Position numbers and translations under genes: made by a program. 64,000 nt of DNA from Ascidiella aspersa (lineage: Eukaryota), in the NCBI GenBank assembly GCA_963924565.1, contig OZ004611.1:21018001-21082000 (forward strand), written 5' to 3'. Under the pieces are notes generated by a model, which saw nothing but the letters and a program-made list of their open reading frames with translations, ran no database searches and was not told where the DNA came from. The stretch's first letter is position 1. Each line of letters begins with the position of its first letter. Shown one piece after another: positions 1,062 through 57,100 of the stretch.

Positions 1062-1860
1062 TTATTTTAGCCCAAACTTTTCACAAACAACATCTGGCAA
1101 TATGTATTTATTCTCAATTTTTTTTTCGCGCATTAAACCAGCAGCAAAACTCTGTTTCTTGTTAAAGATTTTCACGCTCACTCTGTTACCAGCATCTAGT
1201 GTTTCGTTGACAGAGAGTGTTGTCAAACAAATGTCTTCTTTCATAGAGAAAACGTTGTCTATATGTCCAGCTCGTTGTCGTGGCGCAAAGAATCTGCGAA
1301 ATCAAACAGCATTTATCGCATTTAGGTTATATTTCTGCTTACGCATTATCAAAGATCAAACATATCATGCCTAAACAACCTTTCACCTAACCCCAAAACC
1401 CACCCTGAAGTACATCACTAACTCTCCTAACAGTATTAACCCTAAGCCAATTTCTAACCCCTACCATTGCCCCTAAAATATGCTTGCATTATAAAAGCTA
1501 AGGGAATAATGAAATATTCGAAACGTTTGAAATGATACCTGCTTATATATGGGCTTTGATATTCCAAGTGCTTCCAACTAAAATCTCCAATCGTTATGCT
1601 CCAAAAACTATCAAGCTTGTACTTTGTTTTTTTTTCAAGTTGTTTTAATTGTGAAAGCAACGCGCAACAAAATTAACCGATTTGTTATCAAAAAAAAAAA
1701 CTGTAATCTGTCTTCATTTGTTTAAAATTATGCCGTTTTTCCGGTTATTTGCCGCGAGATCAGACAGGATGGCGAGGAAAGTGGCTTACCTTAAACGCAG
1801 GCCCCGATCGCAAACAACAGATTTAGTCAGATGTTTACACTCCCTGGTGATTTCTGCCAT
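1062..1860 (-). CDS. Putative two-exon gene of unknown function (about 100 aa; MAEITRECKHLTKSVVCDRGLRLR-FFAPRQRAGHIDNVFSMKEDICL...); may be incomplete or a pseudogene
   Basis: ATG at 1860. Exon 1860-1790 ends AG|gtaagc (phase 2). Acceptor tttcgcag at 1293 continues in frame into ORF 1062..1244. No recognisable homology beyond a weak Neuralized/NHR-like spacing. Confidence 0.35.
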
Positions 1861-1885
1861 TGTGTAAAGCGTTCAAAGTCTAGTG

Positions 1886-2201
1886 CAGGTGTTCTTGAAC
1901 TGGGGTCCATGGACCCTTGGGGGTCCGTGAACTAATTTCAGGGGGTCCATGAAGGCCAAATTGAAATATTAGTGTACGTTTGAAAAGTAATCAAATTAAA
2001 AAAAGAGTTTAATTAAAAATGAAACGTTTTACCACTGAATTAGACTCCTTTTTACATAAACCATCAGCATATTTCTGACAGACTATTTGATTGTGACGTC
2101 AATTTATGAGATCATTTTTAACAATTTCTTACCTACAGGGGTCCACGTGAAGCAAAAAATAATTTTAGGGGTCCGCGGTGAAAAAAGTTTAAGAACCCCT
2201 G
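1886..2201. mobile_element. hAT-type MITE
   Basis: Imperfect TIRs CAGGTGTTCTTGAAC / GTTTAAGAACCCCTG; perfect 8-bp TSD GTCTAGTG at 1878-1885 and 2202-2209. Confidence 0.85.
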
Positions 2202-2296
2202 GTCTAGTGCGAAGACTGACGGACGAATTTGAATTTTATTTTTGCGTTTTATTTCATTACATAACATCTAACGAGGCTTAATGGAATTGTTTAATG

Positions 2297-2494
2297 TTAA
2301 GTGGCCAACTCACCCCGGTCTTGGTCATACCAGTTGCCCCATTCGCCATACCAGAGTTCCCGGTCGTCATACCAAGCACGTCTTCTACGAGAAAGCTGTT
2401 TATACTTCTTGTACTTGTTGCCATGATGGCTTCCAGAACCAAGAACGGACGAAACCAGAAATAAAAATACGATGGTCAAAATCAACTTGTTCAT
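2297..2494 (-). CDS. Secreted WYD-motif peptide precursor 1 (signal peptide, basic pro-region ending RRRR, then AWYDDRELWYGEWGNWYDQDR)
   Basis: MNKL + hydrophobic signal. Acceptor ttttcag lies immediately before the ATG. Non-coding exon 1 ends CAAG|gtaagg at 2713; TATAAA at 2769-2764. A phase-1 donor G|gtgagt at 2314/2313 may splice over a 46-nt intron to 2267 (DVM*); otherwise read-through gives GELAT*. Confidence 0.8.
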   Translation of the reverse strand: MNKLILTIVFLFLVSSVLGSGSHHGNKYKKYKQLSRRRRAWYDDRELWYGEWGNWYDQDRGELAT

Positions 2495-2712
2495 CTGAAA
2501 AAAAACAGCAAATGGTTATGTTTTATTTTGAATGGCGTCAACTGCGGTTATAGATAATACTGGGACCAGCCCAAACGGACCACCCACAAACGTTATACTC
2601 TATTCTTTATGGAATTTTAAATTCTACTTTGATTACTTCATATATTCTATACTCCTAATAGCGGAATAATACTTAATAATGTTATTCATCATTGTTTCGC
2701 AAATGGCCTTAC

Positions 2713-2826
2713 CTTGGCTTGAGTGAAATAAGGCAACGTGATTACAGCGTACCCTGGAGATTATTTATAGGTTGGACCAGGGCGTTTTACTTATCAACTT
2801 CCTTTAACATTCCAGGAAAATTCCAA
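2713..2826 (-). promoter_or_regulatory. TATA promoter and short non-coding exon 1 of WYD precursor 1
   Basis: TATAAA about 50 bp upstream of the CAAG|gtaag donor. TGATAA (GATA site) and a kappaB-like GGAATTTTCC (2824-2815) lie upstream. Same layout in the two paralogs. Confidence 0.6.
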
Positions 2827-5572
2827 GCGACCGTTTGGCAGTCGGCGCACTCTTTAGCAACAACAGGTTTTGTTTCACTCATATGCTTGGCAAAGTGTCT
2901 TGGAACAAGGAAATATTTTTAACAGACTGCACGTCATTGTCCTGTGGAACGTTTGCTTTTGCCTTCTATAAAACATTGGTAAACGAGTCTTTTCCAGAAA
3001 TCAAAACCCATATCGTTTGTCAAATATTGGGACCGGTCCGCTGTAAGCCATAGTCTGCAACAACTGTTTTTCAGGACCGAAACCCCACTTTGCTTTAGAT
3101 CATACGAAACAATTGGTTCCTAGAGATCATTTTGTTGCAAAAACTATTCACTGCCATCACAGCGAATGTTCTCAACCTTAAAACTTTAACTGAAACTTTA
3201 CAGTACAAGTTTTGAGTTAAGCTTGGCATCGTTACAATCAAAGAAGCAATTATGCAATTACAATTTTCAGTTTTTTTTTCTTTTTATAATAGGCTAATCG
3301 CGAGAAAAATGTGTTAGCTCATGATAGTTGAATGATATCTAAAAATATTTTATAGAACTTTAGAATTGTTTTAGGTCAACATTGTTTTTGTGTTCGGCCT
3401 GCACATAAACGTCTTCCCGTTGTTTTTGGCATAGTTTACACGACTGGAAGTATCGTATAAAGTGCCTGTTTGGTTTCGTTTAAAATAGAGGAACGGTCAG
3501 AAGCACAAACGTTTCGTACAGAGACACTTCCTGGAAATGTTGCGCTTCGACACTCCGGGTACGACAAGTTTTCCTAAGATCGTGGGCGGTTTCGCCAAAA
3601 CGTGTGGAAATCCCTCTTCAACTGTTCTGTTGACGATAACCGGGCGATGAAAATCATCACGAAACTTACGCAATGCAATACTACTCGCCAAAGTTGTGCA
3701 ATCACACACCCTTTGAAGGGAGTTTTCGGGCAGATTTTCAATGTTGCAACGCTCTGTATTGATCTTTTTGTTAAAAACCAACATTCTAAACCAGTACTAC
3801 GCAACCTTTTTTTTTACTGGCGGCACACTATGAGCTAATCGATATTTGGCGGCACCAAATAATTGTAAATCGACGTTACAGATAAGAACCATGCAAGACA
3901 ATCTATAAGTTAAGGAACGTTTTTTGGTTAAATAGGCCTAAGGCACAAAAAATTGGCGTGTTAATGTGTCTTCATATTACAATTTTGCTGTATTTGTCCT
4001 AAAATACCTTATGCCGCTTAAATTCATAAAAAAATACTTTTCTTGCTATAGTCAGAGGACTGTATAAAATCCAAGTACGTCTTGAAGTTAAACCACAGTT
4101 AGTGCATGTAGGCTTGGAAAACTTTTGGCTTCTTTTTATAGTTTAAGTCAAACATTATTCGCCTAACTTAAAACACGTGTGTGTTGTTTTAACATTTATT
4201 TAGCATCTACGATGCATGCTAAACCACGAAGGAAACTAAAAGTGTCTCTTTTAAAAGACAATAGCTTTATATTTCGAGTAGGCTAATGGAACGTACCAAA
4301 TTATTATCAGTAAGCTTTTTGTATCGTGGTTAAGTAAATGGTATTAAACATTCTGTTTTAACCGTTTTCAGAAAATACCGGCATACTTGAGCAAATCGTT
4401 TTATTTTTCAGTACAAAATTAGCATTTTAGTTCAGTTGAGCATTTCTAAACGGAATATATTCATTGGTGTGCTGCTTTGTTGAGTAAATGGTAATTCTAG
4501 CCTAAAAATGAACATCGTCAAGTTTGCAAATTGATTTTATTAACAACTTGTTGGCTAACGGCAACTGTGTGTAACGCAGTTTCGAAATCCCGAGTTTTCA
4601 GTCTGCCTCCGGCAAATTTGCCGATTCTGTCTTGCGACTCCGACTCTATGCCATGCACAACATCCCTTTAGATGTTTAAAATAGGGTGGATGATCTATAT
4701 CAATCCACTGAATGTGGGGTACCATATAACTTATCCGCCAACTATTCGTAGTTGGCAAATTTTTACCACATGCCATTTCACCTATACAATTTACAATTTT
4801 ATCGGTTTCGAATATCGCGGCCTCTTTTGGGTTATTTGGACTTTGGACTCGGGTATCATACGAAATTTTACGCAAGTTTCAAGTCCCTAGTTTGATTGTA
4901 GCAAAATAAACCGACTTTGTCGAGTCCTTAATCCAAACACCGCGGTCCTGCTTACAATAGAAATACTTTGGCTTTTATTGATATTATCATTTTTCGTTTT
5001 TATAACGACAGGTGTACTATCTATAAACTAGCAAAAACATTATTCGTGACGCTTTCAAGAATGAATAGCTTTATATTCTGGGTAATCGATTGTAATGAGT
5101 TGTTATCAATAAGCTGCATGAAAATATATTACTCTTTAAAGATGAAATATGACAGCCCAGGCTATAATTTTACTAATTTTTAACTAAATTTTTATCTTGG
5201 TTAAGTAAATGTAATATTAATATATATTCCTGTTTAAACCATTTAAAAAAAAACTACTGCCATATGGGCCTACTTATAGCACAACGCTTTCTTTTTTAGC
5301 GGTCAGTTTCACATTTAGGCTAACATTCCATTTCGTTTTGAGCATATATATACCGAATATGTAGCTGAATATTTAAGTTCATAGCAATACTGTCCTTCAT
5401 AGAAATGTACAAAAATACACATTGCCAAAAGTTTTGATTTTATTATAATAGCAACAGTTAAAATAAACACATTTCAATTAGTTTCCGAAACCCTGTCAAT
5501 CATCGATGTCATCTTAATATAATCCATAATCCTATTTACAAGAGGTAACGTGTGGCCATCTAGAAAATCAAG

Positions 5573-6309
5573 TTAGGCACCAGCTTCTTCACTGTCCGCC
5601 ATGGGGAAATAAATTTCGTTTTCTGCAAAATAATATTACAAAATATGTCATATCAAGATACTAAATGCCTTTGTCGAATAAAAAGCATTGATATCATGGG
5701 TATATGTTAAATAAAGCATTAATATTATAATTTTTGCTGAAACTATATATTTTCATTCAAAAGAAATTGCAGTGTACTTCACAAAATTCTTTTTAACTAA
5801 GATTATCCATATGTAATGATCCGTTAACCTGATCGTAGCCTCAATACCAGTGTTTTTTAACACAAAACATTTGTTCCCCCTTTACACAAAACAGCAGTTT
5901 TATTACTTTTTCCCTTCATACATGGACAAGAGATAAATTTCTTCATATTATCTGCTTACTAATGGTGCGTTCAAGCTATATTTTCCAAAATGAACAAACG
6001 TTACCCGGCACTGCTAAGAATCTTCAGCATATAGTTTGAGAATCACAGCTCTTTAGGCAAAACACTCACCAACAAACCAACACTAGTGTTTGCTGAAAGT
6101 ACAAATTAATTACCTTCTTGGTCAAACCAAGGCCCCTGTGTAGGTTCTTGGTAATGCCACGGCTTCTGTTTTTGCTGCTGGTAATTCCACGGCCCCTGTT
6201 TAGGGTAATTGTGCCGTGGCCACTGTTTATTCGGATTCTGTTTGCCTTGCACATTTAGGATGGAGATGGTCAACATCAGTAGCACGAGGGTCAAAGAAAG
6301 CTTGTTCAT
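5573..6309 (-). CDS. Secreted Trp/Tyr/Gln/Lys-rich peptide precursor 2 (exons 6309-6114 and 5622-5573; about 81 aa)
   Basis: MNKLSLTLVLL signal peptide; acceptor tttttag directly before the ATG. 10-aa periodic PW motifs (GPWNY, KPWHY, GPWFD). Phase-1 donor G|gtaatt; the in-frame acidic last exon ENEIYFPMADSEEAGA* follows a ttttgcag acceptor. The last-exon assignment is less certain than exon 2. Confidence 0.8.
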
Positions 6310-6570
6310 CTAAAAAGGTAAACATTGAGAAAATGTTACAACAAAATCAGTTCGCCAATTATAATAAACAAATTTTTTTATAGAAAATTCAAACCCTAAT
6401 AAAGGATTTGATGCTGATAAACAGTTATCAGCCACTATAGACGCAAATTGTTCTTTTTCATAAGCGTACAATGTACATATTTTTTAAACAATGCAACTTT
6501 GCTCTTCGCGTTACAAACAAAAAGGATAAATAACGTAAATTAGATAATATTTTTGATGGCTTTCACTTAC

Positions 6571-6690
6571 CTTGATGGAAGTGTATAAAACATAGTGATT
6601 AAATGGCGCTCGCACACGATTTATATAGTTGTCAGCTTGGGCGTTTTCTGTTATCATTCCTCCTTACTTTTAAGAAATTTTAAAACAAGC
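6571..6690 (-). promoter_or_regulatory. TATA promoter and non-coding exon 1 of precursor 2
   Basis: CTATATAA at 6628-6621; donor CAAG|gtaagt at 6571; TGATAA; upstream block alignable to that of precursor 3. Confidence 0.6.
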
Positions 6691-6979
6691 CTTTGTCAGT
6701 GCCAGTTTCTGGAAACAAAATTGACAGACACCATACTTCCTATATTTTGTTATCATTACATTTTAAGTTAGGTTCTCATTGTTTAACTTACTTCAAATCT
6801 GTCAAACTGCTACCTTTTCAAAACGATAAACCAACTAAAAATGGGTCGTAAGAGTAAATATGGATAATAATCTTCAGTACGGACAAACTTAAATTTTCTG
6901 CTCCATAAGATAACCTATTTTGGACACAACAGAATGTCGTTATAGAAAACACGACCTTCGTAATGCCCTAGGCCTAATG

Positions 6980-8318
6980 CAAGGGTCGAGCTCGCGAGCC
7001 ATATATGGTTCTTTCGACGAAAGAATCTTGCTTGCAGAAAAACCTAATATATCATTTCTCAGCTTGATTTCAATAAAACTGCACGCGGGCCGCTTTCCTA
7101 ACCTTAATGGCCGCTTTCCTTACCTTATATTTCCTTTTTATTAACATAGTAGCAAATTTTCGGCGCTTCGCGCGAATCCTACTTGTTTGTTTTTAGACTG
7201 TTATCCCATTTGAAGGAATCTCTTAATATCCAAAAGGTCCTGTTCTTTTAACGGAACGGCGTAATCAAAGTTGTGTAAATTTGGCTAATTCATTTTTGGT
7301 GCATATCGTGTTCTGTCCTTTTAATGAGAACAAAATAAAACGGCCCTGCTCAATTTTCTATATTTTTGCCAGCCTATAACTAGATCAGCGCTTCTCAACC
7401 GGTGCGCCGCGAGCAAAAGGAAAAATTTTGTAATATGTAAAAATTATTTTTAACTTTCCTATTAAGCTTAGCTCATTGATTCCAAAGTACTTTTAAGTAC
7501 AAAGCTCAATAAGACCTTCAAAGCAACAGCATCTAAATCAGATCTATAATACCATAGTATACCACCGACATATAATAACTCCAACTTCGCAGTAATAACC
7601 ACGACAGAATAAGATCTAAAATAGTTTACATGAGACCTTAACATGTCGAAATAAGTCCAAAATTAATCGGAAAAATACAACGTCCCAGACTGTAAGGAAA
7701 GGGTATGGGTTGATTAGGGGACACCTGTTTGGCATTGGACGTTTGCTGTCGACATTTGGGCGCCTCTGTTTTGGCCCTGGATGTTTTGCCCCTGTTTGGG
7801 CTTATGGCGGGTAGCTTGTGGTGTTAGCATTTGGGTTAGGGTTGAAAATATTAGGAAAGTTAGTGATAGTTATAGGTGGGGCTTAGGGTTAGATAAGAGG
7901 TTATATAGGCAATATTTTGGCAATTTTTATCTGATTTCGATTTCGTTATTATTACGACTATTAGGTATTAGTCTTATTTTCGCCCTTTTCCTAACTGTCT
8001 TTTATTCCGAAGTTGCTTTTGTTCTTATTTTGGTCTCAAGGCTAGAGACCCTTTAAAGATATGCAACTATAAATCCTATATAACCAAAAATTGCAAGCAT
8101 TTTAAAAGAAATACCGGTACACCTAAAAAATTTCGCACTCGCTTCCCTCGCAAGGTGCGCCGCGGCGTTTCCAGATGTCTCTACGTGCGCCACCAAGTAA
8201 AAAAGGTTAAGAAACGCTGAATTAGATATTAAAAAAGTGTTATATGGCTCTCATGGAAATACAACGAAGGAAATTTGGCTTTTATGTCTCCCTTAGGTAA
8301 AAAGGTTCCCGACCTCTG
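6980..8318. mobile_element. hAT-type MITE (outer) containing a nested MITE
   Basis: Ends CAAGGGTCG.. / ..GGTTCCCGACCTCTG; near-TSD GCCTAATG / CCCTAATG. Confidence 0.55.
7386..8219. mobile_element. Nested hAT-type MITE
   Basis: TIRs CAGCGCTTCTCAACC / GGTTAAGAAACGCTG; TSD AACTAGAT / AATTAGAT (1 mismatch). Confidence 0.75.
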
Positions 8319-8863
8319 CCCTAATGGGTTTTCTTTCGTCACCTGTCGCTAATAAAAGCGGTAATTAAAATCACTTTCTGCTCAACTGCTAAAATAAATT
8401 TCTCGCCTTATAAAGTATTCTATCGGTTCGTAAACGCTATTTAGGCTTAACAAGATTGACATCATAAATAAAATCGATTAGATTTTTTTTTAGTTCATAA
8501 ATTCATAAATGGACGAGTAGCCTAATGCAAAGTAATGCATAGGTATTGCAAACTTTCTTTTACTATTGAAAAGTTTTAATTTTCTTATTAAATCCATTCC
8601 ATCATATATTTTCTATTGTTGACCTTGTAATATATTTATGACTAAGCTATAGACTGTTTAGCAACCGTAAAGTTTGGTTTCTGGACATTTCGAGGTTTCT
8701 TGCGTCGTTGGTGTATCCAATAAGCTTACTATTGCAGAGGGTATTTAAATGCTGTATGCTTTGCAAAAAGAAAACAAATATTTTAAACTTCTTTGTTTAT
8801 TATTTATTTGGCAACGCAGTTTCTCAATGATGGCGTGCTCATCGATGTCATCTCTGTGTGATC

Positions 8864-10233
8864 CTACTGGCCTTCATTTTCCTGCAGACCAGCATCTGGA
8901 AAATTAAAAGGGTCAGTCATGTTTTCCTTGTCCAGCATTGGCAAACATTTTAATTTTGGCAAAATGATAGACAAGATGTTGCAACCTGCCAAGTGCGATG
9001 TGAAACTCAAAGTATCAATATTCTAGTCATAAATTTGTTGTTTAAAATATCAATAATGTTTGACAGCCGCATTTGTCTTAGTAAACAACTGAAAAAGCAG
9101 TGGCATTGTAGGCAAAGCCGAGCTTTCGCAGAACCGTTCTTCTTCAGGTCAGAGAAGAATAAAATAAATAATTCTTCCTCCGACCTGAGCACAGTTATGC
9201 GGAAGCTCGTCAACTTCAAAATACGATTTTTCTACAGTGGCTCTTTTTTTACCTCTATTTACAATTATACGGCGAAATCGGATGTCGCTCATAAAATCAT
9301 TATCGGTTGGGTAAGTATATTCGCATTGGACCAAACTCGTAGTACCAAGCGCTAGTCGCCCTACAACACTGGGTCTATATATTGCTAAGGACTCAACAAG
9401 AACTCACCGTGGTCATACCAGCTACCAGCTTTATGATGGTCATACCAGTTTTCAGCTTTTGGCTGGTCATACCAGTTTTCAGCTTTAGGCTGATCATACC
9501 AGCTACCACCTTTGTAATGGTCGTACCAGTTTTCAGCTTTTGGCTGGTCATACCAGTTTTCAGCTTTAGGCTGGTCATACCAGCTACCAGCTTTATGATG
9601 GTCATACCAGTTTTCAGCTTTAGGCTGGTCATACCAGTTTTCAGCTTTAGGCTGGTCATACCAGCTACCAGCTTTATGATGGTCATACCAGTTTTCAGCT
9701 TTAGGCTGATCATACCAGCTACCACCTTTGTAATGGTCATACCAGTTTTCAGCTTTTGGCTGGTCATACCAATTTTCAGCTTTAGGTTGGTCATACCACC
9801 TGCCAGCTTTATGATGGTCATACCAGTTTTCAGCTTTTGGCTGGTCATACCAATTTTCAGCTTTAGGTTGGTCATACCAGCTGCCAGCTTTATGATGGTC
9901 ATACCAGTTTTCAGCTTTAGGCTGGTCATACCAGTTTTCAGCTTTAGGCTGATCATACCAGTTACCACCTTTGTAATGGTCATACCAGTTTTCAGCTTTT
10001 GGCTGGTCATACCAATTTTCAGCTTTAGGTTGGTCATACCAGCTACCAGCTTTATGATGGTCATACCAGTTTTCAGCTTTAGGCTGGTCATACCAGTTTT
10101 CAGCTTTAGGCTGGTCGTACCAGGACTTATCTTCAAGCTGGTCGTACCAAGAACCCCCCTTGGCCTTTCCATGTACATCCAGAATGGAAATGGCCAGAAC
10201 CAACAACACGAGAGTAAACGAAAGCTTGTTCAT
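8864..10233 (-). CDS. Secreted WYD-repeat precursor 3 (exons 10233-9408 and 8895-8864; about 285 aa; 28 nine-residue xxKxxxWYD-type units)
   Basis: Signal peptide MNKLSFTLVLLVLAISILDVHG; acceptor tttttag before the ATG. Units: 17x QPKAENWYD, 6x HHKAG(S/R)WYD, 3x HYKGG(S/N)WYD and 2 divergent N-terminal units. Phase-1 donor G|gtgagt; last exon DAGLQENEGQ* after ttttccag, followed by AATAAA. Confidence 0.9.
9412..10167 (-). repeat. Coding 27-bp tandem repeat (28 units) with 81-bp higher-order periodicity
   Basis: Recurring ggtcataccagttttcagctttaggct and variants; unit order mostly A-A-B. Confidence 0.95.
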
Positions 10234-10579
10234 CTAAAAAAAAATCGTCAAATGACGCTCATTATGTTATGTTCAGGTGCCTCACAGATAGCCAGATTCA
10301 AACCTCAGTAAAAATGAGACAGTGTTTATTAAAAAATAATATATTTAAAAAACTTACTTTATTTGTAACTATAATCTATATTTGTGTCAAAGAGATATAA
10401 TGAAGGAAACCTATCACTACAAAGCATTGTATCTTTTTATTTAAAGTACTGTTTTCTACGATTAAAAAATCGTTAATGCAAAATAGAAAATCATCTATTG
10501 GCCCAGCCATACTTTTGACCAGTTACAAAGTGAAATCAATAAATTAATAAATCTATAATTCGATTTACCTTTCGCTTAC

Positions 10580-10700
10580 CTTGATATAATAAAATACAAC
10601 TATAATGAATACATGGCAATCCAGCGGGACTTATATAGAGTTTTTGCGTGACAATTTTTGTTGTCAATTCCATAAACTTTCAAGAAAATTTCAAACAATA
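10580..10700 (-). promoter_or_regulatory. TATA promoter and non-coding exon 1 of precursor 3
   Basis: CTATATAA at 10638-10631; donor CAAG|gtaagc at 10580; same spacing as in the paralogs. Confidence 0.6.
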
Positions 10701-11203
10701 ATTTTGACGATGGCAGTTGCTCAATGCCATGATGACAAACGCTGGGTTCGACTTTGGTGTCATGACCTCTAGCGACCGGTCGATTAGAACCGAAATTATT
10801 AAAAGATTGCCACGTTGCTGCATGCTGTACAAACTGCAGTAGTAAAATCCTATTAGGAAAACATTGACAACCAACAAGTCAAATCATTGGAGTTAACACC
10901 TTTTTGTAAAGACATCCTTTCGAGTTACCCACACTTTAGACAGCGCTATCATCAAAGAAAACAAACATGCAATTTTTGAAAGTCAAGTTCGTAAAAATAT
11001 CTTGATGTTTTTCTCTTGTCAAAAAGCTAGTATAATTTATTAAAATCTTCTACTCAACCAATTTCGGTTTTGTACTTTGACGGCTTAATAAAAAAATGTA
11101 AAAATGTAAAACAAAAACACGAGAAAATGTACGTAATTTCGAAGTGTACAAATACAACATCACATACCATTGCCAAAAACATAGCGAACGGAACATTGTG
11201 GAG

Positions 11204-38228: not shown

Positions 38229-41200
38229 ATGATGACGGAGTACAAGCCGAGCAAGATCTTCGGGATTCCTGGCGAATCTGGTGTTATAAGCATAAATTCA
38301 GACAACATGGTTATTTTCGGCAAGCACGATACACTTCCGATGCTGGCGGTCAAATGCCATATACCAAAGGGCGATGGCACCGACAATATTGAAGGGTATG
38401 ACATTCAACAACAATTCACTGTCTATCGGGAATAAATTTTCACGTGTAATTTGCAGGCTAAAATTTAAAAAAAAAATATTTTTTTAATTACCTTACTTTG
38501 CCTTTTATCCAAATTACCTGACTTGGCTTGCAAAGCAGTTTACTCGTTATACGTTGTATTTCTGTTGTTTGCTGATTCAAATATCGCCCCATGATCCGAT
38601 AAGTTTATCTCGTTTCTTTAGCGTCAAGAATCATGTCGGCCTGTGCCAGCAAATTGACCACAAGAACGCAGTGAAAACCCTGGGTTTCACAACATGGCAA
38701 TCCGGTGCCGCGACCCTGATGAAGTTCGAGCCTGGCACCACTTTAGAAAGCCTCCTGCGAAACGGCGATCGCATGAACCCGGCAGTCAAACTGCAACTGA
38801 TCCGAGACGTCGTAAGCGGAATCAGCCACTTGCACAACCTGTCCGATTACACCCAGGTCACTCACGGCAACATCGAACTAAGCAACATCCTGGTCACTCA
38901 CGATATGCGCTGCAAAATCGCCGGGCTCAGTCACTTACGTGAGTGGGATTTCCGAGAGCAAAGCTGCACAGCGCATGATCTTCAGTCAGCCAAGGAGAAA
39001 GACGTGCACGCCGTCGGCAAGATCATGCACGCAGTGCTGGCGGAAAGCCCTCAAGGAGCGACTTATTTCAACATCGACCAAATCCCGATTCCTGATGGTC
39101 CGAGCGGCGAGGTTATCAAACACCTCAAATCGTTGGCGGTTCAATGCGTTAGCCGAATCCCAACGATGCGACCCGCTGCGCTATATCTCGAACACCAGCT
39201 GATAAGCTTGGAAAAATATTTGAGCGCCAATAAGATGCAGTCATGCTGCTACGAAAGCGTTTTAGGAAGTGTCTTGTTATGTTGTCCGTCCCAAGACCAA
39301 ATGATACAACCGTTAAATAGATACTTCGACGAAGACCTGACAAGTAAGTTAAACTCAATTATCCCGTATAATACAGGAACTAAAATAACTGGAGATCAGT
39401 GACGGCGCATAATCGATATTGGGCGTTATTCGTTAAACCCACACAAAAGTAAATGTAATAAGAATATCAAAGCCCATACAGAAGTAGGTATCAAAGTAGA
39501 TGTGATTCATCCAAGCCAGTGTTAAATTTTTCACAATAAAAATGAATTTAGTGGGATAGCCTTCATTGATGGCCTTACTTAACAAAGTTGCTTGTAAAGT
39601 GGAATATTTTTCCTAATTTCGTATTTTACGAATTGCTGTGTCTGGTATAATTTGTGTATTATGTATATTTTGTGTCTATGTTTAAAGAACAAATATATAT
39701 ATTCGAAAAGTTGAGACAAAGTTACTCATCACAGGGATGTACAATAATATCGCATCGGAGCCGATGCCCGATACCCTTATAAATTTCTTGGTCCAACGAT
39801 AAACAAGATTTCTTATGTGAAAGAAATTTTGCTCATTTACTTATTCGCAAATTATTCCCTTTGTACGTTTCTATTTGATAAATCGTACTTGACAAAAAGA
39901 CATACTTTGGTATCGGATCGAAGCCGTACTTTTGTTCAAAAAATCATGTATCGGCTATGGAATAAAATATACGTGTATCTACGAACTTTAATATTTTGTT
40001 TGGTATACGAAACTAAAGTATTTTCCTTAAAATATGTTTGGTATCGATTAGAGATCGATTATAATTTTTGTAATGCGTATAGCCCAACTGAGCCATGGAC
40101 TTGTGATCTAACCTTTTGAAGCTGTACTGAACATAAACTATACATACCTGATAGGGCCAACTGATTTTCTGTGGCCCATCATACAAATATCTACGCACAG
40201 ATTTAAAAGATATAACCTCTTACTGTTTTCAAGGCCAGGCGTCGGGTTTTTGCAGCGACGATTCCGATCCCGTCTTTGTCGAATCAGACGAAACCTATCC
40301 GAAGTCACCAGTTGGCGATCGAACGCCAAGCAAAAACGGTGAGTTTTTTCTAAGCGAGTTCACAACTTTCTCGCTAAATCGTCTAAACGGTTTACGCAAG
40401 GGGTTTGCAACACTTCACTAGTCGCTGACCATACCTACACTCACAAAGGTACCTGCAGGCCGTACTAAATGTTAACTTATACTTATGTTAAAGCGTGTTT
40501 AGTTTAGGCTTTTACACAACAACTGGAAATCAACCTCGTTTTTTTGCATTTGAAAAATGGTCTAATTAGCCTACATTTAAGAAAGCATGTGCTTGCGTTT
40601 GTTTGGTTTAAATTTCGGGTCAGCGCTACGTCATCCATGATCAAAATGAAAAAGTATAATAGAAATATTTTAGGGAAACGCGATATATTTAATCGTTAAT
40701 CTAGCTTATAGTGTAATTTAAATAGGGCGGTTAAACTTTTGATATTATGTTCATATTTCAAAGACGCAAAAACTGGTGCGCAGCACAACAAAAACATTCA
40801 GATCTAGGTGCCGTACTAAGTTGGCGAAACTTTCTTTGCTGATTGTTTCAGGTTATGTACAGCGCATTTAGGCTGAAAAGCTTCCCTTTAAACGCAAACA
40901 TACCAGATGAATAAATAAGATTCGCGAGAGTTTTTTACGTTTACGTTGTTAGAATAGACAAAAAATATATAGAAAACTCTAGCTTGTCCGGTTTGCAAAA
41001 GAAGTGACGGTCGGTGGGTTGGATGATAGAGTTCAAGCCAAGCGAACAGGATCCTTCCCGCGGGCCGCAGGTTTCCGAACCCTTGGCATTACTGATATTT
41101 TGCGGACCCCAAAAGCACCACAATCCCGGTTTTTCGAACCGCAACTGCCGAAAAAGGATTTTTTTTTTAAATGTAAAATATATTTAGGCTACCCCTTGGG

Positions 41201-44200: not shown

Positions 44201-47200
44201 ACAAGTTACATAGATTTTAATATAAAAGATGCTGAAGGTAAACTGCAGGCAGGGGTTGAGGGACAACGATTTTGATTTTGTCACATTGTTATGTCATAAC
44301 AGGATCCATGATACATGTAACTTAAAGAAACTATCGTTTTTGAAATGTGCAACTAGATTTTGTCTTCATATACTGGTACTAAAGAAGTTGATGTCGAAAA
44401 GATAGTGTAAAAATGCGTTGATGTAGTTCAAATTGACCAAACGTTTAATTTAGAAGATACTGTGATGCCGTGATCACAAGATCATTATATTTGCACATTA
44501 CTCGATAAACTGGCCTTCATCAATGTGATTTAAGAAAAAAGGTGTGAGATGTTGACCACACAGCTGTACAGAAACTACTATCAAAGTTTGCGCAAAGCGA
44601 GAAAACATACCGGTCATTTACCTAGTTTAAATCTCGAGTTGGATGCCAGTAACATGCGATAAAATGAGCATATAGCAAAGAAGTTTTAGATTCAACCAAA
44701 AGCGCAAAACAAATGGCGTTAATTGGAATTGGCAGAAATTGCGTTTCGACCGAGTATAAGTTCAAGAGGCAATACCAGCTAATATTTAAATTGGCTTGAG
44801 TTGTAATTTAAATTTGGTATATTTACCGAACAATACAGCCACCATAAAACACGAAATTTTCTGCAAAACATATTAAAAGTGACTACAAAAATGCATATAA
44901 AACACACTTTTGAAATTTTGTTTACATAGGTAAAATAGACATAAAGTATAGTTTAAGGGGGTGGCCTCGTTCCTTGCTTTGTGCCAGTTGTAAGTTCAAA
45001 CTTTAAAGGAACTTTAGTATGTTACTTTCCAGAAGCAGCAATGCTCAGACGAAGAAATCCCAGCTACCATCTCAACCTTGTCAGGTATTAGTGTCCTGTT
45101 GTCATTTATATCGGAAGGTACTGTATATACCTACTTATTTCAACCAATATTTGTATCAGATTTAAGTTTAAGTATCATTTGTGTAGCTGGTAAACCGGAA
45201 ATATTGCGATGTTTAGGCCTATGCGAAAGGGCAAAAATATAGTTGTCTATATACATACATATATTCATGTATTTTTAAATGAGGTAAATAAAATGTAAAT
45301 GCACTTTCACGTTAAAGGGTCCCAATGCTCTCGAAAATAAATCAACAACCTAATGTCCAATGCAGTTCAAAAATTAAAACCATTAGGTGTAAACCATGAA
45401 AGATTTATTATTTTTTATTTCACCAGACTCTTAAGAAAGATTCGTGGTCTAGCTGTGAGCTCTATAGTAAATATAACAAAAAAAGGTATGTATTCTATAA
45501 AAAAGCTATGTATACTAGAAGACAAAAGTCTTTACAAGTGAAACTTTTAGTTGATAGCACTAGCAGTATATTTTGAAAGCTTAATTGCAATTAGTTTTAT
45601 TGCTTTGTTATTATAATCTAAAACAATAAATTTCTGTGGTCCCAACTATTTTAAAATCATATTTCTTTATACAGAAAACTAATTGCATGAAATGATAACT
45701 TGTTTGCTGAATATTTGAGAAGTCCCTGAAACATAAATTTTGCGTTTGTGTTGTATAGATCTCAAATCAAAACGGAACCATCACGCAAGCCACGATTCGT
45801 TGATCTGCCTCGCAGGGTATAAACTAACATATATGGGTTTACGTTTGAGCAGATTTCAGAAACATTAGGTCGCGCCCCCTCTACATTAGTATTCCAAACC
45901 CTTGACACTAGTATTTCAAAAACATATACTATGTTTGAAAGTCAATTCTTTCGCTTTTTTTAATATGTAAAATGATCTGCTTTATACATTCAATGTTTTT
46001 AGAATAGTATGCACAGCGCGCAGAAAATACAAAGGGCTGTGTAATATTTTGCTATAGTCAGCTTTTGTTTAAAAAACCTTTTTAGGGGCGCCCCCTACTT
46101 AAAAAAATTAAATTAAAGGGATTTGTTCGTTGCAGCAACTTATACTATAGGCACACAGTTTAATACATCTTCTTACGCACATTCTAAACGTGTAAATTGT
46201 ATTTTTACAGGCAAAATCTTTGTTTGCGAAAACTAATCAACAAGGTGAGTCATATATTTAAAGTAATATTTTCCTATGATTTGCACCCAAAAAAGATTAC
46301 AAATGTTTTGTGGTACGCCCATAACATCATATATAAAACAAGTCAAACTTTTTAATCCACAACATCAATAAATACTAATGTTATAAACATTTCAAGTCCA
46401 ATGAGTTTTGATATACTTGCAACGATATTGATTCAGAAACAGATTGTTATCGCCATTTTGTTTTTTAAGCGACAGTCCGTCGGGGAGTAAATCTACTTAA
46501 TCCATGCTGTTCGTTTTGTTAAGAAAACGTTCAAACCAGCCAGAGAAAGGATCTCTCGTGGGTGACGCTACCGGAGGAACTGTGGCAGTTAAAAAGAAAA
46601 AGAGGTTTGTGACAAAATAGTTTCAGTTGATCTCTGTTGGGTAACGATGGCAGTCTTGTATTTTTTTCGGTAAAAAGAGTGACACGGAAAAAATCATAAT
46701 TTATTCTTGAAAAATCACAGTGTGTAGAACAATTTCTGAAATTTGTTCGCCCGTTTGTGATCTCCCTCTATTATAGTAAACTGTGCGCCATTGATAAAAA
46801 CCCAAAACAGGAATATTCATGCAGGATGACTCCGGGTATGGGTCTACAGAAAATCGATCGGCCATTCATAGATTTCTACACATGGTAACGCAAGTAAAAA
46901 ATAACCTGTGGTGAGACCCTGAAGTCCTCAGGCTAATCGGCCCTAACTTGTTTATTCAAGGGTTTTCGAAAGCTTTCCCGCATTCGGGTTGTTACCTCGT
47001 TATTTTTATAGAAACAACATCGTCAAGTCCGCCACTTTCGAGTGGCGGCGTGGCGAAAAATCTGCGCGAAAAAAACGCCAAGGGTCTGCAAAACCAAAAT
47101 TTTAATTCGGCGATGGAATGGTGTCGAAAAATGTGGCGGGAATGCGTGCAGAAAAGCGAACCTTCATGCTGCCGGGGCCTCAGAATGTTTGCAAACCAGC

Positions 47201-48022
47201 TTGGCGACAAAGGCGAAATTTACGACGCGATGCTTCTACTTGTTCTCGCCCTTCGACTCACTTTGGCCATTCAAAAGGCTGAAACGAGATACGGTGAAAT
47301 CGAGAAGTGTTCCGTTGACCTCGTGTATCTCGCCAAAAACCTTGGTCAACCTCTCGTGGTGAACTACCTTCTGCCTTTGGTGGAGGAAATCGGAAATGAT
47401 GTAACGGATGACGTCGAACCCTTCTTCAACTTTACTTTAAGTACTTTGGAGTACTTTTCCGGAGAATACCGGCAAGCTAAAGGTGATTTAAATGGTGCAT
47501 GATGTTTATGAGAGCGCGATGTAATTTAATTTGCAAAATTGCTTAATGCTGTTATGTGTAACCTTTGAAGCCAAGATGTGCATCTCAGCCTTGCTGAAGT
47601 AGGGGTTTCAAGGATTAGGTTGAGAAGTTGCGTGGTAGGTTATGTGTGTATCTGCTTGGCCGCTGAAAACAGTCACGCCTAAACCTGTGTCGTATGAGAT
47701 AGATGAGAACGTTTTTAATCGAGGCTGACTTTTTCGCGTGCATTTTCTAGCTCTGCTCGAGAAAGCGGTTGCTGGCTTGACGCAGCGACACCAGTTAACA
47801 TACAACACCCAAGGCCTTTGCAAGTTCTTTCTTGGCTGTCTGTATATGCGAGACGATACTGACGTCAAGATGTTCGGCAAGGCCATTGCCAGCTTTGAAG
47901 AAGCGAAGCTGGTTTTTGAGAAAAGCAGGAGCACCGTCGACCAAAATCTTTGCTCTCGGGCAATCGAGCAAATAAACATCCGAAAGCAACTGCTGAAATT
48001 AAGTGAAGAGTACATGTTTTAG
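38229..48022 (+). CDS. Pseudokinase (RIPK/TKL-like) + low-complexity linker + TPR-like helical domain protein, paralog A (about 705 aa minimal model)
   Basis: Phase-consistent exons: 38229-38395, 38622-39343, 40234-40338, 41670-41733, 42996-43096, 43804-43846, 45759-45816, 46211-46244, 46524-46604, 47012-47482, 47751-48022 (a further exon is possible at 45033-45084). Kinase motifs LAVK, HKNAVKTLG, HGNIELSNIL, KIAGLS, MRP. Exon phases and motifs mirror paralog B. The kinase and helical exons are solid; the linker exons are less certain. Confidence 0.7.
42281..42579. repeat. About 300-bp palindromic foldback element nested in other repeats
   Basis: ggcgctctttcactattgtacgt..gggttagggtgcgggtt..gagggtgggtcaagt is mirrored by acttgacccaccctc..aacccgcaccctaaccc..acgtacaatagtgaaagagcgcc. 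Confidence 0.85.
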
Positions 48023-54151: not shown

Positions 54152-57100
54152 TTAGATTTTTCCGGACATAGTGTACTTCTCGCGGAGCTCTTTCAGCTTT
54201 AGTTGGCAAATCCTTATTTCCCCTTTGAGTTTGATTTGCTCGATTGCCTGACAGCAAAGCTCACCGTCCTTGCTGCAGTTTTGGGTCTGGTAGGCGAGCA
54301 TTGCATCTTTCACGCTCTGCAAGGCCTTGCGAGCTTGGTCCAGGTTGTCGGGCTGAGCCGCCGACATGTACAGACAGCCCTGGAAGAACCTGCAGTGGCC
54401 GAAGGCTCTGCATTTGAACTGTAGCTGCGGGTCCAGGTCATCTTCAAGTTTGACGACCGCCTGCATCAGAGTACCTTGGCAAAGAGCAAAATAAGGTTGC
54501 GCGACAAAGGACACTTTGCATGCAAGCGGCACTTTTTTGTGGTATTCTTTAGCATGACCTTAGTTTTAGTGCAAACAAAATTTGCAGCTCCTTAAAAAAT
54601 ATTGAAAAGTCACCATAAATGATATTTTGAATCGCAGCTGCTTTATTGAGCTGCATGTTGTCAACTTATACGAAAAGGTTATTTTGCCGTGAATGAACGT
54701 CGCGCTTTTGCATTATAACAAAAGGTGCACACTTTAAAATGACGTTTTTTGGTCTATAGTGTCTATACCAGGGATGGTTTACCACGGCACGCCAATCAAT
54801 TCAACGCTCATGTTATATCACAGTGGTTCTCAAAGTATGGGTCGCGACCCAAACGTGGGTCGCGCAGGGTCAAAAAATGGGTCGCTCTATGATGATTCAA
54901 TCCTGCACAAACGGACTTTTTTCATTTCATTTTTTTTAATATTTTCAATGCAATCATAACTGAGTTGTTGCAACATAAGCTTTCCACGTGACTTCGAATC
55001 TGTAACGTGGATTATTGCACCATAAGTGGTTTTATGAACGTTTGACAGCCAACTACAGTAGCTGCTAAGACTGGTGTAAGCTTTTAGTCACCAAACAAGC
55101 CACGCTGACATTATAAAGGAAAAAGTCAGTTTCACCAATCACACTAAAATAAATCAATCATTTGTTTGTAATCAATCATTGTTCCATAGAACTGTGTACT
55201 ACATCTGGTTGTCGGGGTCTTTTTCTATTTCATGCATATCGGAAAAAGTACATTTTTTGTTGTTTGAGACTTGGGTCGTGAGTTGCTTATAAAACTCAGA
55301 TTTGGGTCGCGCTTAAAAAGTTTAAGAACCACTGTTATATCACCTTACGAAAGTACAACATTTCATCACTACTACATAATTAATTAATTTAATATTACAT
55401 CACTAACACTAGCGCTAACTAAATGGTTTAACACATTTCCAGCTCGTGTCACGAATATGTGTCTTAACTGTTGTATTCAACATTATTTTTTGAGTGCGTT
55501 AAACTTGTTGTTTAACGACTAACCGTTCGTATTACGTCACAATGCCCCAAAAGTGGCGTGACGCTTACTGCGTTAATGCAGGGCATTCCACAGTACATTA
55601 GTGGTTCTCAACCGCCGGTTCGCGTCAACTTTCCTACCGGTCCGTGAAATATGTTACAATTTTATATCTTAATTGCAAAATGCAAGATGTTGAAGGCTGC
55701 TTGTCCATCAAATTTAGAACTTCGCCAGTTCCGTAATTTGCAGCCTTGTGACGTAAATAGAGTTAATGATATTATTTGGACTTCATTGTACGTCACAATG
55801 CTCCAGTGTTTAAAATTAGGCTACAACTCGTTTAAGTCTTAAACTTTAAGAACAGTTGTACGTGAAAAACTTCCATAGAACCATGTATAACACGTATGAT
55901 ATCAAAAAGACAGCAGCGAATTGCTCATTACATTGAAGTTTCCGTTATTTGCTTTTAAGTTGCATACTTTTGTCGTTTTTTTAGTTTTTTGGTGATTTTA
56001 ATTTTTGAAGGTCCACCGGTCCGCAAAATTTGTTTTGAAATTTTATCGGTCCGTATGCTAAAAAGGTTGAGAACCACTGTTCTACGTTACAATCAAGCAC
56101 GTGTGTTTTTTCGCGACTGAGAGACCAACTAAAAGCGAAAGTTATAGCTAACATTTCTAGGTATCGGCTGAAAAACATTGAAGTATATTCCAAAAAAGAT
56201 AGGTAAATTAGATGTCAGATCACAGGGCTGCAGAGTCGGACTCGGGACTCAAATCCGACGTGTGCGCATGCGCACGACAAAATTTCGAAACTGATAAGCC
56301 AGAAAACTGTAACCCTGGTTTGCCAGTGCAAAACTAAACATAGAAAAATGTTTGGCACGCGAGTTGTTGATATTTTGACAGTATTCATAAACTGGCACAC
56401 TGAGTACAAAAGGTTGCCGACCCCTGGTCTATACCTTCGGATTTTGAGTGATCCTTGGAGAAATACTCGAGGATGCCGACGGTGTAGCTATAGAGGAAAT
56501 TGTACATTGGATCACAGTCACTGGTTTCCCGTTTCATTTGCAGCAACGAAGGCAGGAGGTAGTTTTTCACCAACGCGGGATTAGAAGCGTCCAGGTCCTT
56601 GACTAGGTACAGGAGGTCGCCTGAACACTTTTCTACCTCCTCCTGGTGGTACTCGATCGGTCGGGCGAGCGAGGAAAGGCGAAAGGCGAACACAAGCAAG
56701 AGTACAGCGTCGTAAATCGCCCCCTGCTCGCCCAGACGGTTCGCGTAGAGTCGCAGGTTGGTCGAGCTACACGCGTTGCTCTTCTGCACGCACTCGCACC
56801 ACATTTTCTCGCGTGTTTTTCCAGCATTTGCAAAACTGCCCTGGACGAGTTCCTTGGAATGGCGTTTGAGCAGCTTCGCCACCGCGCCGCTATTCGCAAA
56901 GCTCGGTGCAATGGAGGTCGTTTCTAGCAAGGGCGAAAAAATAAATTATTTCCAATTAGTTATTCTACTGTTCAATCTGATAAACCATCTATAGTTGTTT
57001 GTTTGTCATTTATTCCAACTAAACGCCACTGGAAACAGCATTTCCATTTAATTTGAAAAATTTTCTGCACATTTTATTGCGTATGAGTAAATACTCATTT

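What the first reader, a model, noticed from the sequence alone, without database searches (positions are those of the whole stretch)
2250..10700. Tandem cluster of three secreted Trp-Tyr-Asp peptide precursor genes: candidate animal ribosomal modified-peptide system
Seen: three same-strand genes with the same design. Each has a TATA box, a tiny non-coding exon ending CAAG|gtaag, an acceptor abutting the ATG, an MNKL signal peptide and an aromatic core. A phase-1 intron follows the last W(Y/F)D motif, then a short mostly acidic tail exon. The cores are highly divergent but keep Trp next to or near Tyr/Phe. Established: ascidian blood-cell peptides such as styelin D, halocyamines, plicatamide, tunichromes and morulin carry bromotryptophan and/or DOPA/TOPA-derived residues, and clavanin/styelin precursors have acidic C-terminal extensions. 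Inference: this is a fast-evolving family of precursors for modified aromatic peptides used in defence, metal binding or tunic cross-linking. I do not recognise it as a named family, and no modifying enzyme is encoded in this window.
Basis: partly seen in the sequence, partly recalled or inferred. Interest (0 to 1): 0.88.

Follow-up and report, generated by a model that had tools for sequence, protein, structure and literature searches.

The report
Secreted Trp-Tyr repeat gene cluster
Three neighbouring sea-squirt genes encode small secreted, probably unfolded proteins built from repeated Trp-Tyr(-Asp) motifs; they form a real, unnamed, lineage-restricted family, but nothing yet shows that they are expressed, cut into peptides or chemically modified.

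Summary
Three minus-strand genes start at window 2494, 6309 and 10233. Each has a TATA box, an identical CAAG|GTAAG donor 56-57 nt further on, an acceptor abutting ATG, an MNKL signal peptide, a Cys-free Trp-Tyr/Phe core, a phase-1 donor after the last W(Y/F)D, and a plausible short acidic last exon.

They are paralogues. B and C match in promoter plus exon 1, signal-peptide exon and last exon/3'UTR. A matches both in the signal exon.

Gene C carries 28 WYD units. Its variation pattern (10 of 15 variant states at codon position 3) shows selection in that frame.

No homologue, Pfam family or paper was found, and there are no further copies in the genome.

The scan had already found a WYD-repeat family on other DNA of this genome (s1-790822). 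I relocated it, and it has a different gene design and shares only the WYD motif. One Ciona protein (H2XTU4) has a similar layout.

The modified-peptide (RiPP) reading is untested. B and C lack processing sites between units, and no tyrosinase or haem peroxidase match fell on this contig.

Best reading: intact secreted aromatic repeat proteins acting outside the cell.

The parts
2763..2769 (-). Gene A TATA box
   Evidence: TATAAAT, 56 nt upstream of the exon-1 donor. The spacing is the same in all three genes.
2713..2740 (-). Gene A non-coding exon 1. The 3' end at 2713 is read from the sequence; the 5' end is an estimate.
   Evidence: CAAG|GTAAG at 2716-2708, an identical 9-mer in all three genes. 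The start site is inferred at about 30 nt after the TATA box.
2314..2494 (-). Gene A coding exon: signal peptide, a basic stretch ending in RRRR, then three WY units (WYD, WYG, WYD)
   Evidence: ORF. Acceptor CAG|ATG, donor G|GTGAGT, phase 1. The signal exon is similar to C (E 6e-7) and B (E 4e-4).
1259..1293 (-). Gene A predicted last coding exon (11 residues, acidic). Uncertain.
   Evidence: An acceptor ...TTTCGCAG and a phase-1 reading to TAG. AATAAA at 1107-1112. There is no similarity to the B/C tails. A read-through stop at 2297-2299 is an alternative.
6621..6627 (-). Gene B TATA box
   Evidence: TATATAA, inside the promoter block conserved with C.
6571..6598 (-). Gene B non-coding exon 1. 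The 3' end at 6571 is read from the sequence; the 5' end is an estimate.
   Evidence: CAAG|GTAAG at 6574-6566. B 6710-6510 aligns with C 10721-10522 at 66% identity, E 3e-15.
6114..6309 (-). Gene B coding exon: signal peptide, then a Gln/Pro-rich core with four Trp units, the last one WFD
   Evidence: ORF. TAG|ATG acceptor, G|GTAAT donor, phase 1. The signal exon is 77% identical to C, E 1e-12.
5573..5622 (-). Gene B predicted last coding exon (16 residues, net charge about -5)
   Evidence: An acceptor ...ATTTTGCAG and a phase-1 reading to TAA. B 5644-5500 aligns with C 8977-8839, E 2e-5, and both share the 3'UTR block GATGACATCGATGA. AATAAA at 5439-5444.
10631..10637 (-). Gene C TATA box
   Evidence: TATATAA.
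10580..10607 (-). Gene C non-coding exon 1. The 3' end at 10580 is read from the sequence; the 5' end is an estimate.
   Evidence: CAAG|GTAAG at 10583-10575.
9408..10233 (-). Gene C coding exon: signal peptide plus 28 WYD units
   Evidence: A 282-aa ORF. The units are listed. Donor G|GTGAGT, phase 1.
9410..10123 (-). 27-nt tandem array inside gene C (26.4 copies, 81% matches), ordered mostly as Q-type, Q-type, H-type units
   Evidence: Tandem Repeats Finder. Unit types: WYDQPKAEN x17, WYDHHKAG(S/R) x6, WYDHYKGG(S/N) x3.
8864..8895 (-). Gene C predicted last coding exon (10 residues, acidic)
   Evidence: A branch-like CTGAC, a pyrimidine tract and CAG acceptor, and a phase-1 reading to TAG. It is conserved with B's tail region. 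AATAAA at 8796-8808.

Best explanation
This is a lineage-restricted tandem family of three protein-coding genes. Each product has a 22-residue cleavable signal peptide (cleavage predicted after V-x-G), a Cys-free low-complexity core, and a short acidic C-terminal exon. In the core, Trp sits next to Tyr or Phe at regular intervals.

The proteins are most likely secreted and act outside the cell largely intact, as disordered 'sticker-and-spacer' chains. In gene C, 28 Trp-Tyr dyads occur every nine residues, each with an invariant Asp and an invariant Lys, and every third unit is His-rich. That layout would give many weak aromatic, cation-pi and charge contacts. It suits a matrix, adhesive or coacervate material, or coating of a polysaccharide such as tunic cellulose. 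The Tyr and Trp residues are possible substrates for the oxidative chemistry known from ascidian blood cells.

Shown: paralogy, gene design, selection on the WYD frame, and absence of known domains.

Inferred: secretion (from the sequence of the signal peptide), disorder, extracellular role, and the splice to the last exon.
For: - Conserved promoter, exon-1 donor, signal exon and tail block between the paralogues, with unrelated introns.
- Signal peptides are hydrophobic (GRAVY 1.4-1.6 over 22 residues) and have a small residue at -1 and Val at -3.
- In gene C, 10 of 15 variant states fall on codon position 3 (p = 0.0085). Trp and Lys codons are invariant, and Tyr and Asp vary only synonymously. 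There are 5 distinct 9-mers in this frame against 10-11 in the other two frames.
- The mature core of C is 11% W, 12% Y, 11% D and 11% K, with pI 5.3, GRAVY -2.0 and no Cys.
- AlphaFold2 models only the signal helix with confidence. Mean pLDDT is 43.6 and there is no secondary structure in the array.
- B and C have no dibasic sites between units.
Against: - There is no RNA, protein or tissue evidence.
- The last exons are predictions.
- The tandem array keeps other frames open too, so ORF length alone proves nothing.
- A single-sequence AlphaFold2 model is weak evidence of disorder.
- A and B are short (about 50-60 mature residues) and basic. That fits a peptide precursor at least as well as a material protein.
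- No orthologue was found, so long-term conservation is not shown.
Confidence: 0.42

Rival explanations
1. The genes are multi-copy peptide precursors. The chains are cut into short Trp-Tyr-containing peptides that act as signals or defence molecules. The peptides may be modified (DOPA/TOPA, bromo-Trp, sulfo-Tyr, C-terminal decarboxylation).
For: - Signal peptide plus many near-identical short units, with selection holding W-Y-D-x-x-K constant.
- A has an RRRR furin-type site just before its first WYD.
- The same WYD triplet recurs in a second, differently built gene family in this genome and in a Ciona protein. The triplet itself therefore seems to be the functional unit.
- W-Y natural products with a decarboxylated C-terminal Tyr derivative exist (clionamide, celenamides), and morulin Pm of an ascidian carries 6-bromo-Trp plus a TOPA-derived C-terminus (PMC3039461).
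- The tunichrome pathway is still unidentified (PMC10880069).
Against: - B and C have no dibasic or other recognised cleavage sites between units.
- The residue before Trp varies (N, S, R, G, P, L, A).
- No tyrosinase or haem-peroxidase match lies on this contig.
- Clionamide and the celenamides are sponge products, and no ascidian W-Y product is listed in the review read.
- No product data exist.
Confidence: 0.23
2. The genes are antimicrobial-peptide-type precursors. A cationic mature peptide (the cores of A and B) is paired with an anionic C-terminal pro-piece, as in ascidian clavanin and styelin precursors. C would be a repeat-expanded derivative.
For: - The mature exon-2 parts of A and B have pI 9.7 and 9.5, and their predicted tails are acidic.
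- The genes sit in a tandem cluster with a conserved signal exon and fast-diverging cores, as in many defence-peptide families.
- Trp/Pro-rich cationic peptides are a known antimicrobial class (my own knowledge).
Against: - Net charge is only about +3, and the cores are very hydrophilic (GRAVY about -2.2) and Gln-rich. They are not amphipathic.
- C is acidic (pI 5.3).
- No antimicrobial family matched in Pfam.
Confidence: 0.12
3. The units form short beta-hairpin aromatic repeats, like the OCRE domain or bacterial choline- and glucan-binding repeats. These would make a folded ligand-binding solenoid.
For: - A gene of the other WYD family (L046:4221-5522) passes the Pfam OCRE cut-off (42 bits).
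- The Ciona WYD protein is automatically named 'OCRE domain-containing'.
Against: - A, B and C give no OCRE hit even at E <= 10.
- The period is 9 residues, not 8.
- AlphaFold2 predicts no strands.
Confidence: 0.08
4. The genes are not functional. They would be untranscribed or decaying duplicates, or a minisatellite that happens to stay open.
For: - There is no expression evidence.
- There are no homologues in 5.8 and 1.8 billion-protein libraries.
- Several frames are open across the array.
Against: - Three copies keep an intact ATG, signal peptide, splice consensus and open frame despite roughly 30% divergence of the flanks.
- There is a third-position bias in the WYD frame.
Confidence: 0.12

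Closest known systems
R-x-WYD secreted repeat genes of the same genome (scan note s1-790822; loci L045-L051)
   Same: - Signal peptide.
- Cys-free acidic tandem array with an invariant Trp-Tyr-Asp every 8-13 residues.
- Up to 42 units.
   Different: - Unrelated signal peptides.
- CATAAAAG-type promoter about 40 nt before the ATG, with no 5' intron.
- In six of the seven copies the frame runs to a stop within a few codons of the last WYD, with no phase-1 donor in between. At the seventh (C4) this is unclear.
- Arg two residues before Trp, which B and C lack.
- No alignment outside the motif.
Ciona intestinalis H2XTU4 (UniRef, automatic name 'OCRE domain-containing protein'; P0065)
   Same: A 126-aa protein with a signal peptide, seven WYD units at 9-10 residue spacing, and an acidic stretch after the array.
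   Different: - Flanks of the motif resemble the R-x-WYD type (H/R at -2).
- A basic, Cys-containing C-terminus.
- Only the repeat aligns (E 4e-6).
- It has no relatives of its own in the 5.8-billion library.
- It is uncharacterised.
OCRE domain (Pfam PF17780)
   Same: Short aromatic-Asp repeats at about 8-residue spacing.
   Different: No HMM match for A, B or C. OCRE is an intracellular domain of RNA-binding proteins such as RBM5 and RBM10 (my own knowledge).
Mussel-foot-protein-type tandem-peptide adhesives (Mfp-1; Perna Pvfp-1 with modified Trp). From my own knowledge, not tested.
   Same: Signal peptide plus tens of copies of a 9-10-residue unit containing an aromatic residue, Lys and Pro. 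No Cys. Disordered. The aromatic residues are the working groups.
   Different: No sequence relation. Gene C is acidic, not basic. Modification and tissue are unknown.
Eukaryotic multi-core peptide precursors (yeast alpha-factor, apidaecin, fungal ustiloxin UstA). From my own knowledge.
   Same: Signal peptide followed by repeated short cores.
   Different: Those have Kex2/furin KR or RR sites at every unit, and in fungi they have clustered modifying enzymes. Neither is present here.
Ascidian clavanin and styelin precursors
   Different: Those cores are amphipathic, strongly cationic helices. Here the cores are hydrophilic repeats, and no similarity was found.

Membership tests
R-x-WYD secreted repeat family of this genome | Repeated invariant Trp-Tyr-Asp in a secreted Cys-free array | tested here: met
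   C has 28 units and A has 2 WYD plus 1 WYG. B has only 1 WFD.
R-x-WYD secreted repeat family of this genome | Arg two residues before the Trp | tested here: not met
   In C the preceding pairs are EN, GS, GN, GR and KS. In B they are GP, KP and KQ. Only A's first unit has RA-WYD.
R-x-WYD secreted repeat family of this genome | Shared gene design and signal peptide | tested here: not met
   - No 5' intron in the five copies whose 5' ends were read.
- A different promoter motif.
- The frame reaches a stop soon after the array at six of seven loci, with no phase-1 donor.
- Unrelated signal peptides.
OCRE domain (PF17780) | HMM match over the curated cut-off | tested here: not met
   No hit for A, B or C at E <= 0.1 or E <= 10. 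A gene of the other WYD family does pass.
Multi-core ribosomal modified-peptide precursor (RiPP-like) | Signal or leader followed by repeated short cores | tested here: met
   Gene C has 28 nine-residue units after a signal peptide. A and B have 3-4 loose units.
Multi-core ribosomal modified-peptide precursor (RiPP-like) | Recognisable cleavage sites flanking each core | tested here: not met
   There is no KR, RR or RxxR between units in B or C. A has a single RRRR.
Multi-core ribosomal modified-peptide precursor (RiPP-like) | Modifying enzyme encoded nearby | tested here: not met
   ORFs of 110 aa or more in the window give only kinase-like hits. All 14 tyrosinase and all 72 haem-peroxidase exon matches at E <= 1e-5 lie on other contigs. 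Animal pathways need not be clustered, so this is weak evidence.
Multi-core ribosomal modified-peptide precursor (RiPP-like) | Modified peptide product detected | not testable with these tools
   This needs mass spectrometry.
Ascidian cationic antimicrobial-peptide precursor (clavanin/styelin type) | Cationic mature core followed by an anionic C-terminal extension | tested here: inconclusive
   The cores of A and B have pI 9.5-9.7 with acidic predicted tails. C has pI 5.3. The cores are hydrophilic and not amphipathic.
Ascidian cationic antimicrobial-peptide precursor (clavanin/styelin type) | Sequence similarity to known members | not tested
   No reference sequences were obtained from a tool. 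The library searches gave no named hits.
Tandem-peptide marine adhesive proteins (Mfp-1 type) | Modified aromatic residues and expression in a secretory or adhesive tissue | not testable with these tools
   No reads or proteomics were available.

The most novel reading that the evidence does not exclude
The WYD units of this cluster, and of the second WYD family, are ribosomal cores. They would be excised and converted by hydroxylation, bromination and C-terminal oxidative decarboxylation into tunichrome-, clionamide- or morulin-like Trp-Tyr compounds. That would make these the first genetically identified precursors of this class of animal natural products.
Probability: 0.08. Interest if true: 0.9.

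Novelty: new variant of a known kind. Interest (0 to 1): 0.4.

Why it matters
If expressed, these genes add an unnamed, fast-evolving family to the secreted repertoire of sea squirts.

Together with a second, independently built WYD-repeat family and a Ciona protein, they point to Trp-Tyr-Asp as a recurring functional unit in ascidian secreted proteins.

Ascidian blood cells and tunic are known for DOPA/TOPA and bromo-Trp chemistry whose genetic substrates are largely unknown. These genes give concrete sequences to look for in proteomic and metabolomic data.

As it stands, this is a well-supported gene prediction with an open function.

Tried and rejected
**Searches that found nothing**
- Word-indexed searches of 5.8 billion proteins with C and B gave no hits.
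- Pfam gave nothing for A, B or C, even at E <= 10.
- The ESM Atlas gave only sub-threshold hits for C and A.
- No paper holds the motif strings, H2XTU4, or 'OCRE domain' together with Ciona.
- The tunic proteomics supplements of PMC7401272 contain neither H2XTU4 nor OCRE.

**Searches that gave only unrelated matches**
- phmmer of C against 1.84 billion representatives gave 134 hits. The motif count showed only a handful with WYD, and only Ciona H2XTU4 shares the layout.
- A scan of metagenome contigs for period-9 WYD arrays returned simple-sequence DNA of unrelated origin and was dropped. Some of those contigs are labelled gut metagenome. I did not take any of them for human, and none was pursued.

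**Search for further family members in the genome**
- Protein, DNA and 28-nt pattern searches found only the three genes.
- Scanning 30 kb beyond the window start and the rest of the window found no further MNKL gene.

**Structure**
- AlphaFold2 of C gave no fold, so no fold search was made.

**Enzyme linkage**
- No tyrosinase or haem-peroxidase match lies on contig C5.

- The joined (spliced) proteins were not searched. The coding exon of each gene was searched by reference; the short last exons were not searched.
Full report
**What is there**

The window is G000:C5:21018001-21082000 of a 308.6-Mb, 75-contig genome. Earlier notes of this scan call the organism a sea squirt. My only independent pointer is a GH6-family match on the same contig (28.1 bits, just over the cut-off). 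Tunicate cellulose synthase is known to carry such a domain (my own knowledge).

Reading 1800-11200 and listing ORFs shows three minus-strand ORFs that begin MNKL followed by a hydrophobic stretch:
- A, 2494..2297
- B, 6309..6106
- C, 10233..9385

Each ATG directly follows an AG acceptor preceded by a T-run. Each gene has an identical 9-mer CAAGGTAAG 220-350 nt upstream, and a TATA box 56-57 nt upstream of that donor.

Each coding exon ends with one extra G before GTGAGT or GTAAT, which is phase 1. That point comes right after WYDQDR in A, WFDQE in B and WYDH in C.

Downstream, each gene has an AG acceptor from which the phase-1 frame reads a short acidic peptide to a stop. A poly-A signal follows 50-150 nt later. 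The exons are A 1293-1259, B 5622-5573 and C 8895-8864.

**Is it more than chance?**

- blastn between the three loci finds similarity only where the model puts functional parts.
  - B against C: promoter plus exon 1 (207 nt, 66% identity, E 3e-15), acceptor plus signal-peptide codons (75 nt, 77%, E 1e-12), and intron end, last exon and 3'UTR (150 nt, 65%, E 2e-5). The last block includes a shared GATGACATCGATGA.
  - A matches C (E 6e-7) and B (E 4e-4) in the signal exon. A's last NWYDQ unit also matches C's repeat unit at the DNA level.
- A 28-nt degenerate pattern of the shared signal exon, with up to two mismatches, occurs only at these three places in the genome.
- Protein and DNA searches of the whole genome find no fourth member.
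- None lies in the 30 kb beyond the window start.

**Gene C**

Tandem Repeats Finder reports 26.4 copies of a 27-nt unit at 9410-10123. Translated, there are 28 WYD units:
- 17 of WYDQPKAEN
- 6 of WYDHHKAG(S/R)
- 3 of WYDHYKGG(S/N)
- a diverged first unit and a truncated last one

They are ordered mostly as two Q-type units followed by one H-type unit.

Several frames stay open across the array, so I tested the frame by the pattern of variation among 26 units.
- 10 of 15 variant states lie on codon position 3 of the WYD frame (binomial p = 0.0085).
- The Trp and Lys codons never vary.
- Tyr (TAT/TAC) and Asp (GAC/GAT) vary only synonymously.
- The WYD frame gives 5 distinct 9-mers, against 11 and 10 in the other two frames.

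This is evidence for translation in that frame and for selection on W-Y-D-x-x-K.

**Properties**

- The N-termini are hydrophobic (GRAVY 1.4-1.6) and end V-L-G, V-Q-G and V-H-G. That fits signal-peptidase cleavage by the (-3,-1) rule. This is a reading by rule. No predictor was available.
- The mature parts contain no Cys.
- C's core is 11% W, 12% Y, 11% D and 11% K, with pI 5.3.
- The cores of A and B are basic (pI 9.7 and 9.5), and their predicted tails are acidic.
- A has a Lys/Tyr-rich basic stretch ending in RRRR just before its first WYD.
- AlphaFold2, run on the single sequence, is confident only for the signal helix. Mean pLDDT is 43.6, with no secondary structure in the array.

**Relatives**

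Nothing was found for C or B in the 5.8-billion-protein library. Pfam gave nothing, even at E <= 10, and the Atlas gave nothing meaningful.

phmmer of C against 1.84 billion representatives gave 134 hits. The ones I looked at are unrelated repeat proteins, and very few carry WYD at all.

The exception is P0065, UniRef H2XTU4 of Ciona intestinalis. It is 126 aa, with a signal peptide, seven WYD units and then an acidic stretch. Its automatic name is 'OCRE domain-containing protein'. It has no relatives of its own in the library and appears in no paper searched.

**The other WYD family**

An earlier scan note (s1-790822) reported a 42-unit R-x-WYD gene and at least eight such genes elsewhere in this genome. 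A triple-WYD DNA pattern gives 111 matches against 19 for the control. Apart from gene C itself, the listed matches locate such genes on C4, C5 (31.9 Mb) and C8 (four loci), plus a probable non-coding repeat on C1.

I fetched these loci. They have the following features:
- different signal peptides
- a CATAAAAG-type promoter about 40 nt before the ATG, with no 5' intron, in the five copies whose 5' ends I read
- Arg two residues before each Trp
- a frame that runs to a stop within a few codons of the last WYD, with no phase-1 donor in between, at six of the seven loci; the C4 copy is unclear

One of them passes the Pfam OCRE cut-off (42 bits). That probably explains the Ciona protein's name.

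The A/B/C cluster is therefore a separate gene lineage that shares only the WYD triplet with that family. The recurrence of one triplet in two gene designs and in Ciona suggests that the triplet itself is what matters.

**The modified-peptide reading**

The background is sound. A review lists styelins, halocyamines, plicatamide, tunichromes, ferreascidin and morulin Pm. Morulin Pm carries 6-bromo-Trp plus a TOPA-derived C-terminus. The review also lists the sponge compounds clionamide (6-bromo-Trp-dehydrotopamine) and the celenamides. It states that the route is unresolved, either ribosomal plus modification or non-ribosomal (PMC3039461). A 2023 review still files tunichromes under unidentified pathways (PMC10880069).

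A W-Y core cut before Asp is therefore chemically conceivable. Nothing here supports it, though.
- B and C lack cleavage motifs between units.
- The residue before Trp varies.
- No enzyme gene is in the window.
- None of the reported tyrosinase or haem-peroxidase matches lies on this contig. Animal pathways need not be clustered, so this is weak evidence.
- No W-Y product of an ascidian appears in the review.

**Best reading and rivals**

I commit to intact secreted, disordered aromatic repeat proteins acting extracellularly by multivalent Trp/Tyr, Lys and Asp contacts. They would form a matrix, adhesive or coacervate, or bind polysaccharide, and could be substrates of oxidative cross-linking. 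Confidence is 0.42.

The rivals are:
- multi-copy peptide precursors, with or without modification (0.23)
- antimicrobial-type precursors for A and B (0.12)
- an OCRE-like folded repeat (0.08)
- non-functional DNA (0.12)

**Limits**

The 124 genomic sites of the 14-mer YAGATGAACAAGYT could therefore not be read.
- The joined, spliced proteins were not searched. Only the coding exon of each gene was searched, by reference.

Noticed in passing
G000 genome-wide; for example C1:8.89-9.10 Mb (17 sites), C4:0.36-0.43 Mb (7 sites), C2:37,209,121/37,219,373/37,229,625: The 14-mer YAG|ATGAACAAGYT (an acceptor abutting Met-Asn-Lys-Leu) occurs 124 times, against 11 for the control pattern, and often in tandem clusters. 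A longer pattern shows these are not close relatives of A, B or C. They may be other secreted-gene families that start MNKL, or a repeat element.
   Followed up: partly
window 38554-39402 (+), 46948-47502 (+), 54152-54532 (-), 56385-56930 (-), 63126-63996 (-): These are at least two paralogous genes with a protein-kinase C-lobe (Pfam PK_Tyr_Ser-Thr, E 4e-10) and a helical N-terminal exon. The two N-terminal exons are 41% identical (E 1e-40). The kinase tails are 33% identical (E 6e-11).
   Followed up: partly
L002 952-2157 (+) = G000:C1:36,969,890-36,971,095: A 401-aa open frame made of about 44 copies of a 9-residue unit, SYLSDR(L/P)KS. It turned up as a weak hit to gene C (27% identity). It is another period-9 repeat ORF and has no WYD.
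   Followed up: no
L046:4221-5522 (+) = G000:C5:31,917,221-31,918,522: A gene of the R-x-WYD family passes the Pfam OCRE cut-off (42.1 bits, 7 stretches). It also passes the cut-offs of Slx4 and DUF6525. These look like repeat-composition matches.
   Followed up: partly
window 1860-2210, and about 7385-8225: Short elements lie inside A's second intron and between B and C. The first has GGGGTCC(R)TG motifs in both orientations. The second has ends that read as inverted copies (CAGCGCTTCTCAACC ... GGTTAAGAAACGCTG). They look like miniature transposons. The insertion may explain why A's second intron is twice as long as those of B and C.
   Followed up: no
window 95 downward (-): A fourth ATGAATAAACTT (MNKL) start has only a 31-aa frame. 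It has no acceptor, no TATA/donor design and no aromatic core. It is probably chance.
   Followed up: partly
G000:C5:19,613,851-19,614,090 (+): A glycoside-hydrolase family 6 match (28.1 bits, over the cut-off) lies 1.4 Mb from the window. It fits the GH6-like end of tunicate cellulose synthase.
   Followed up: no
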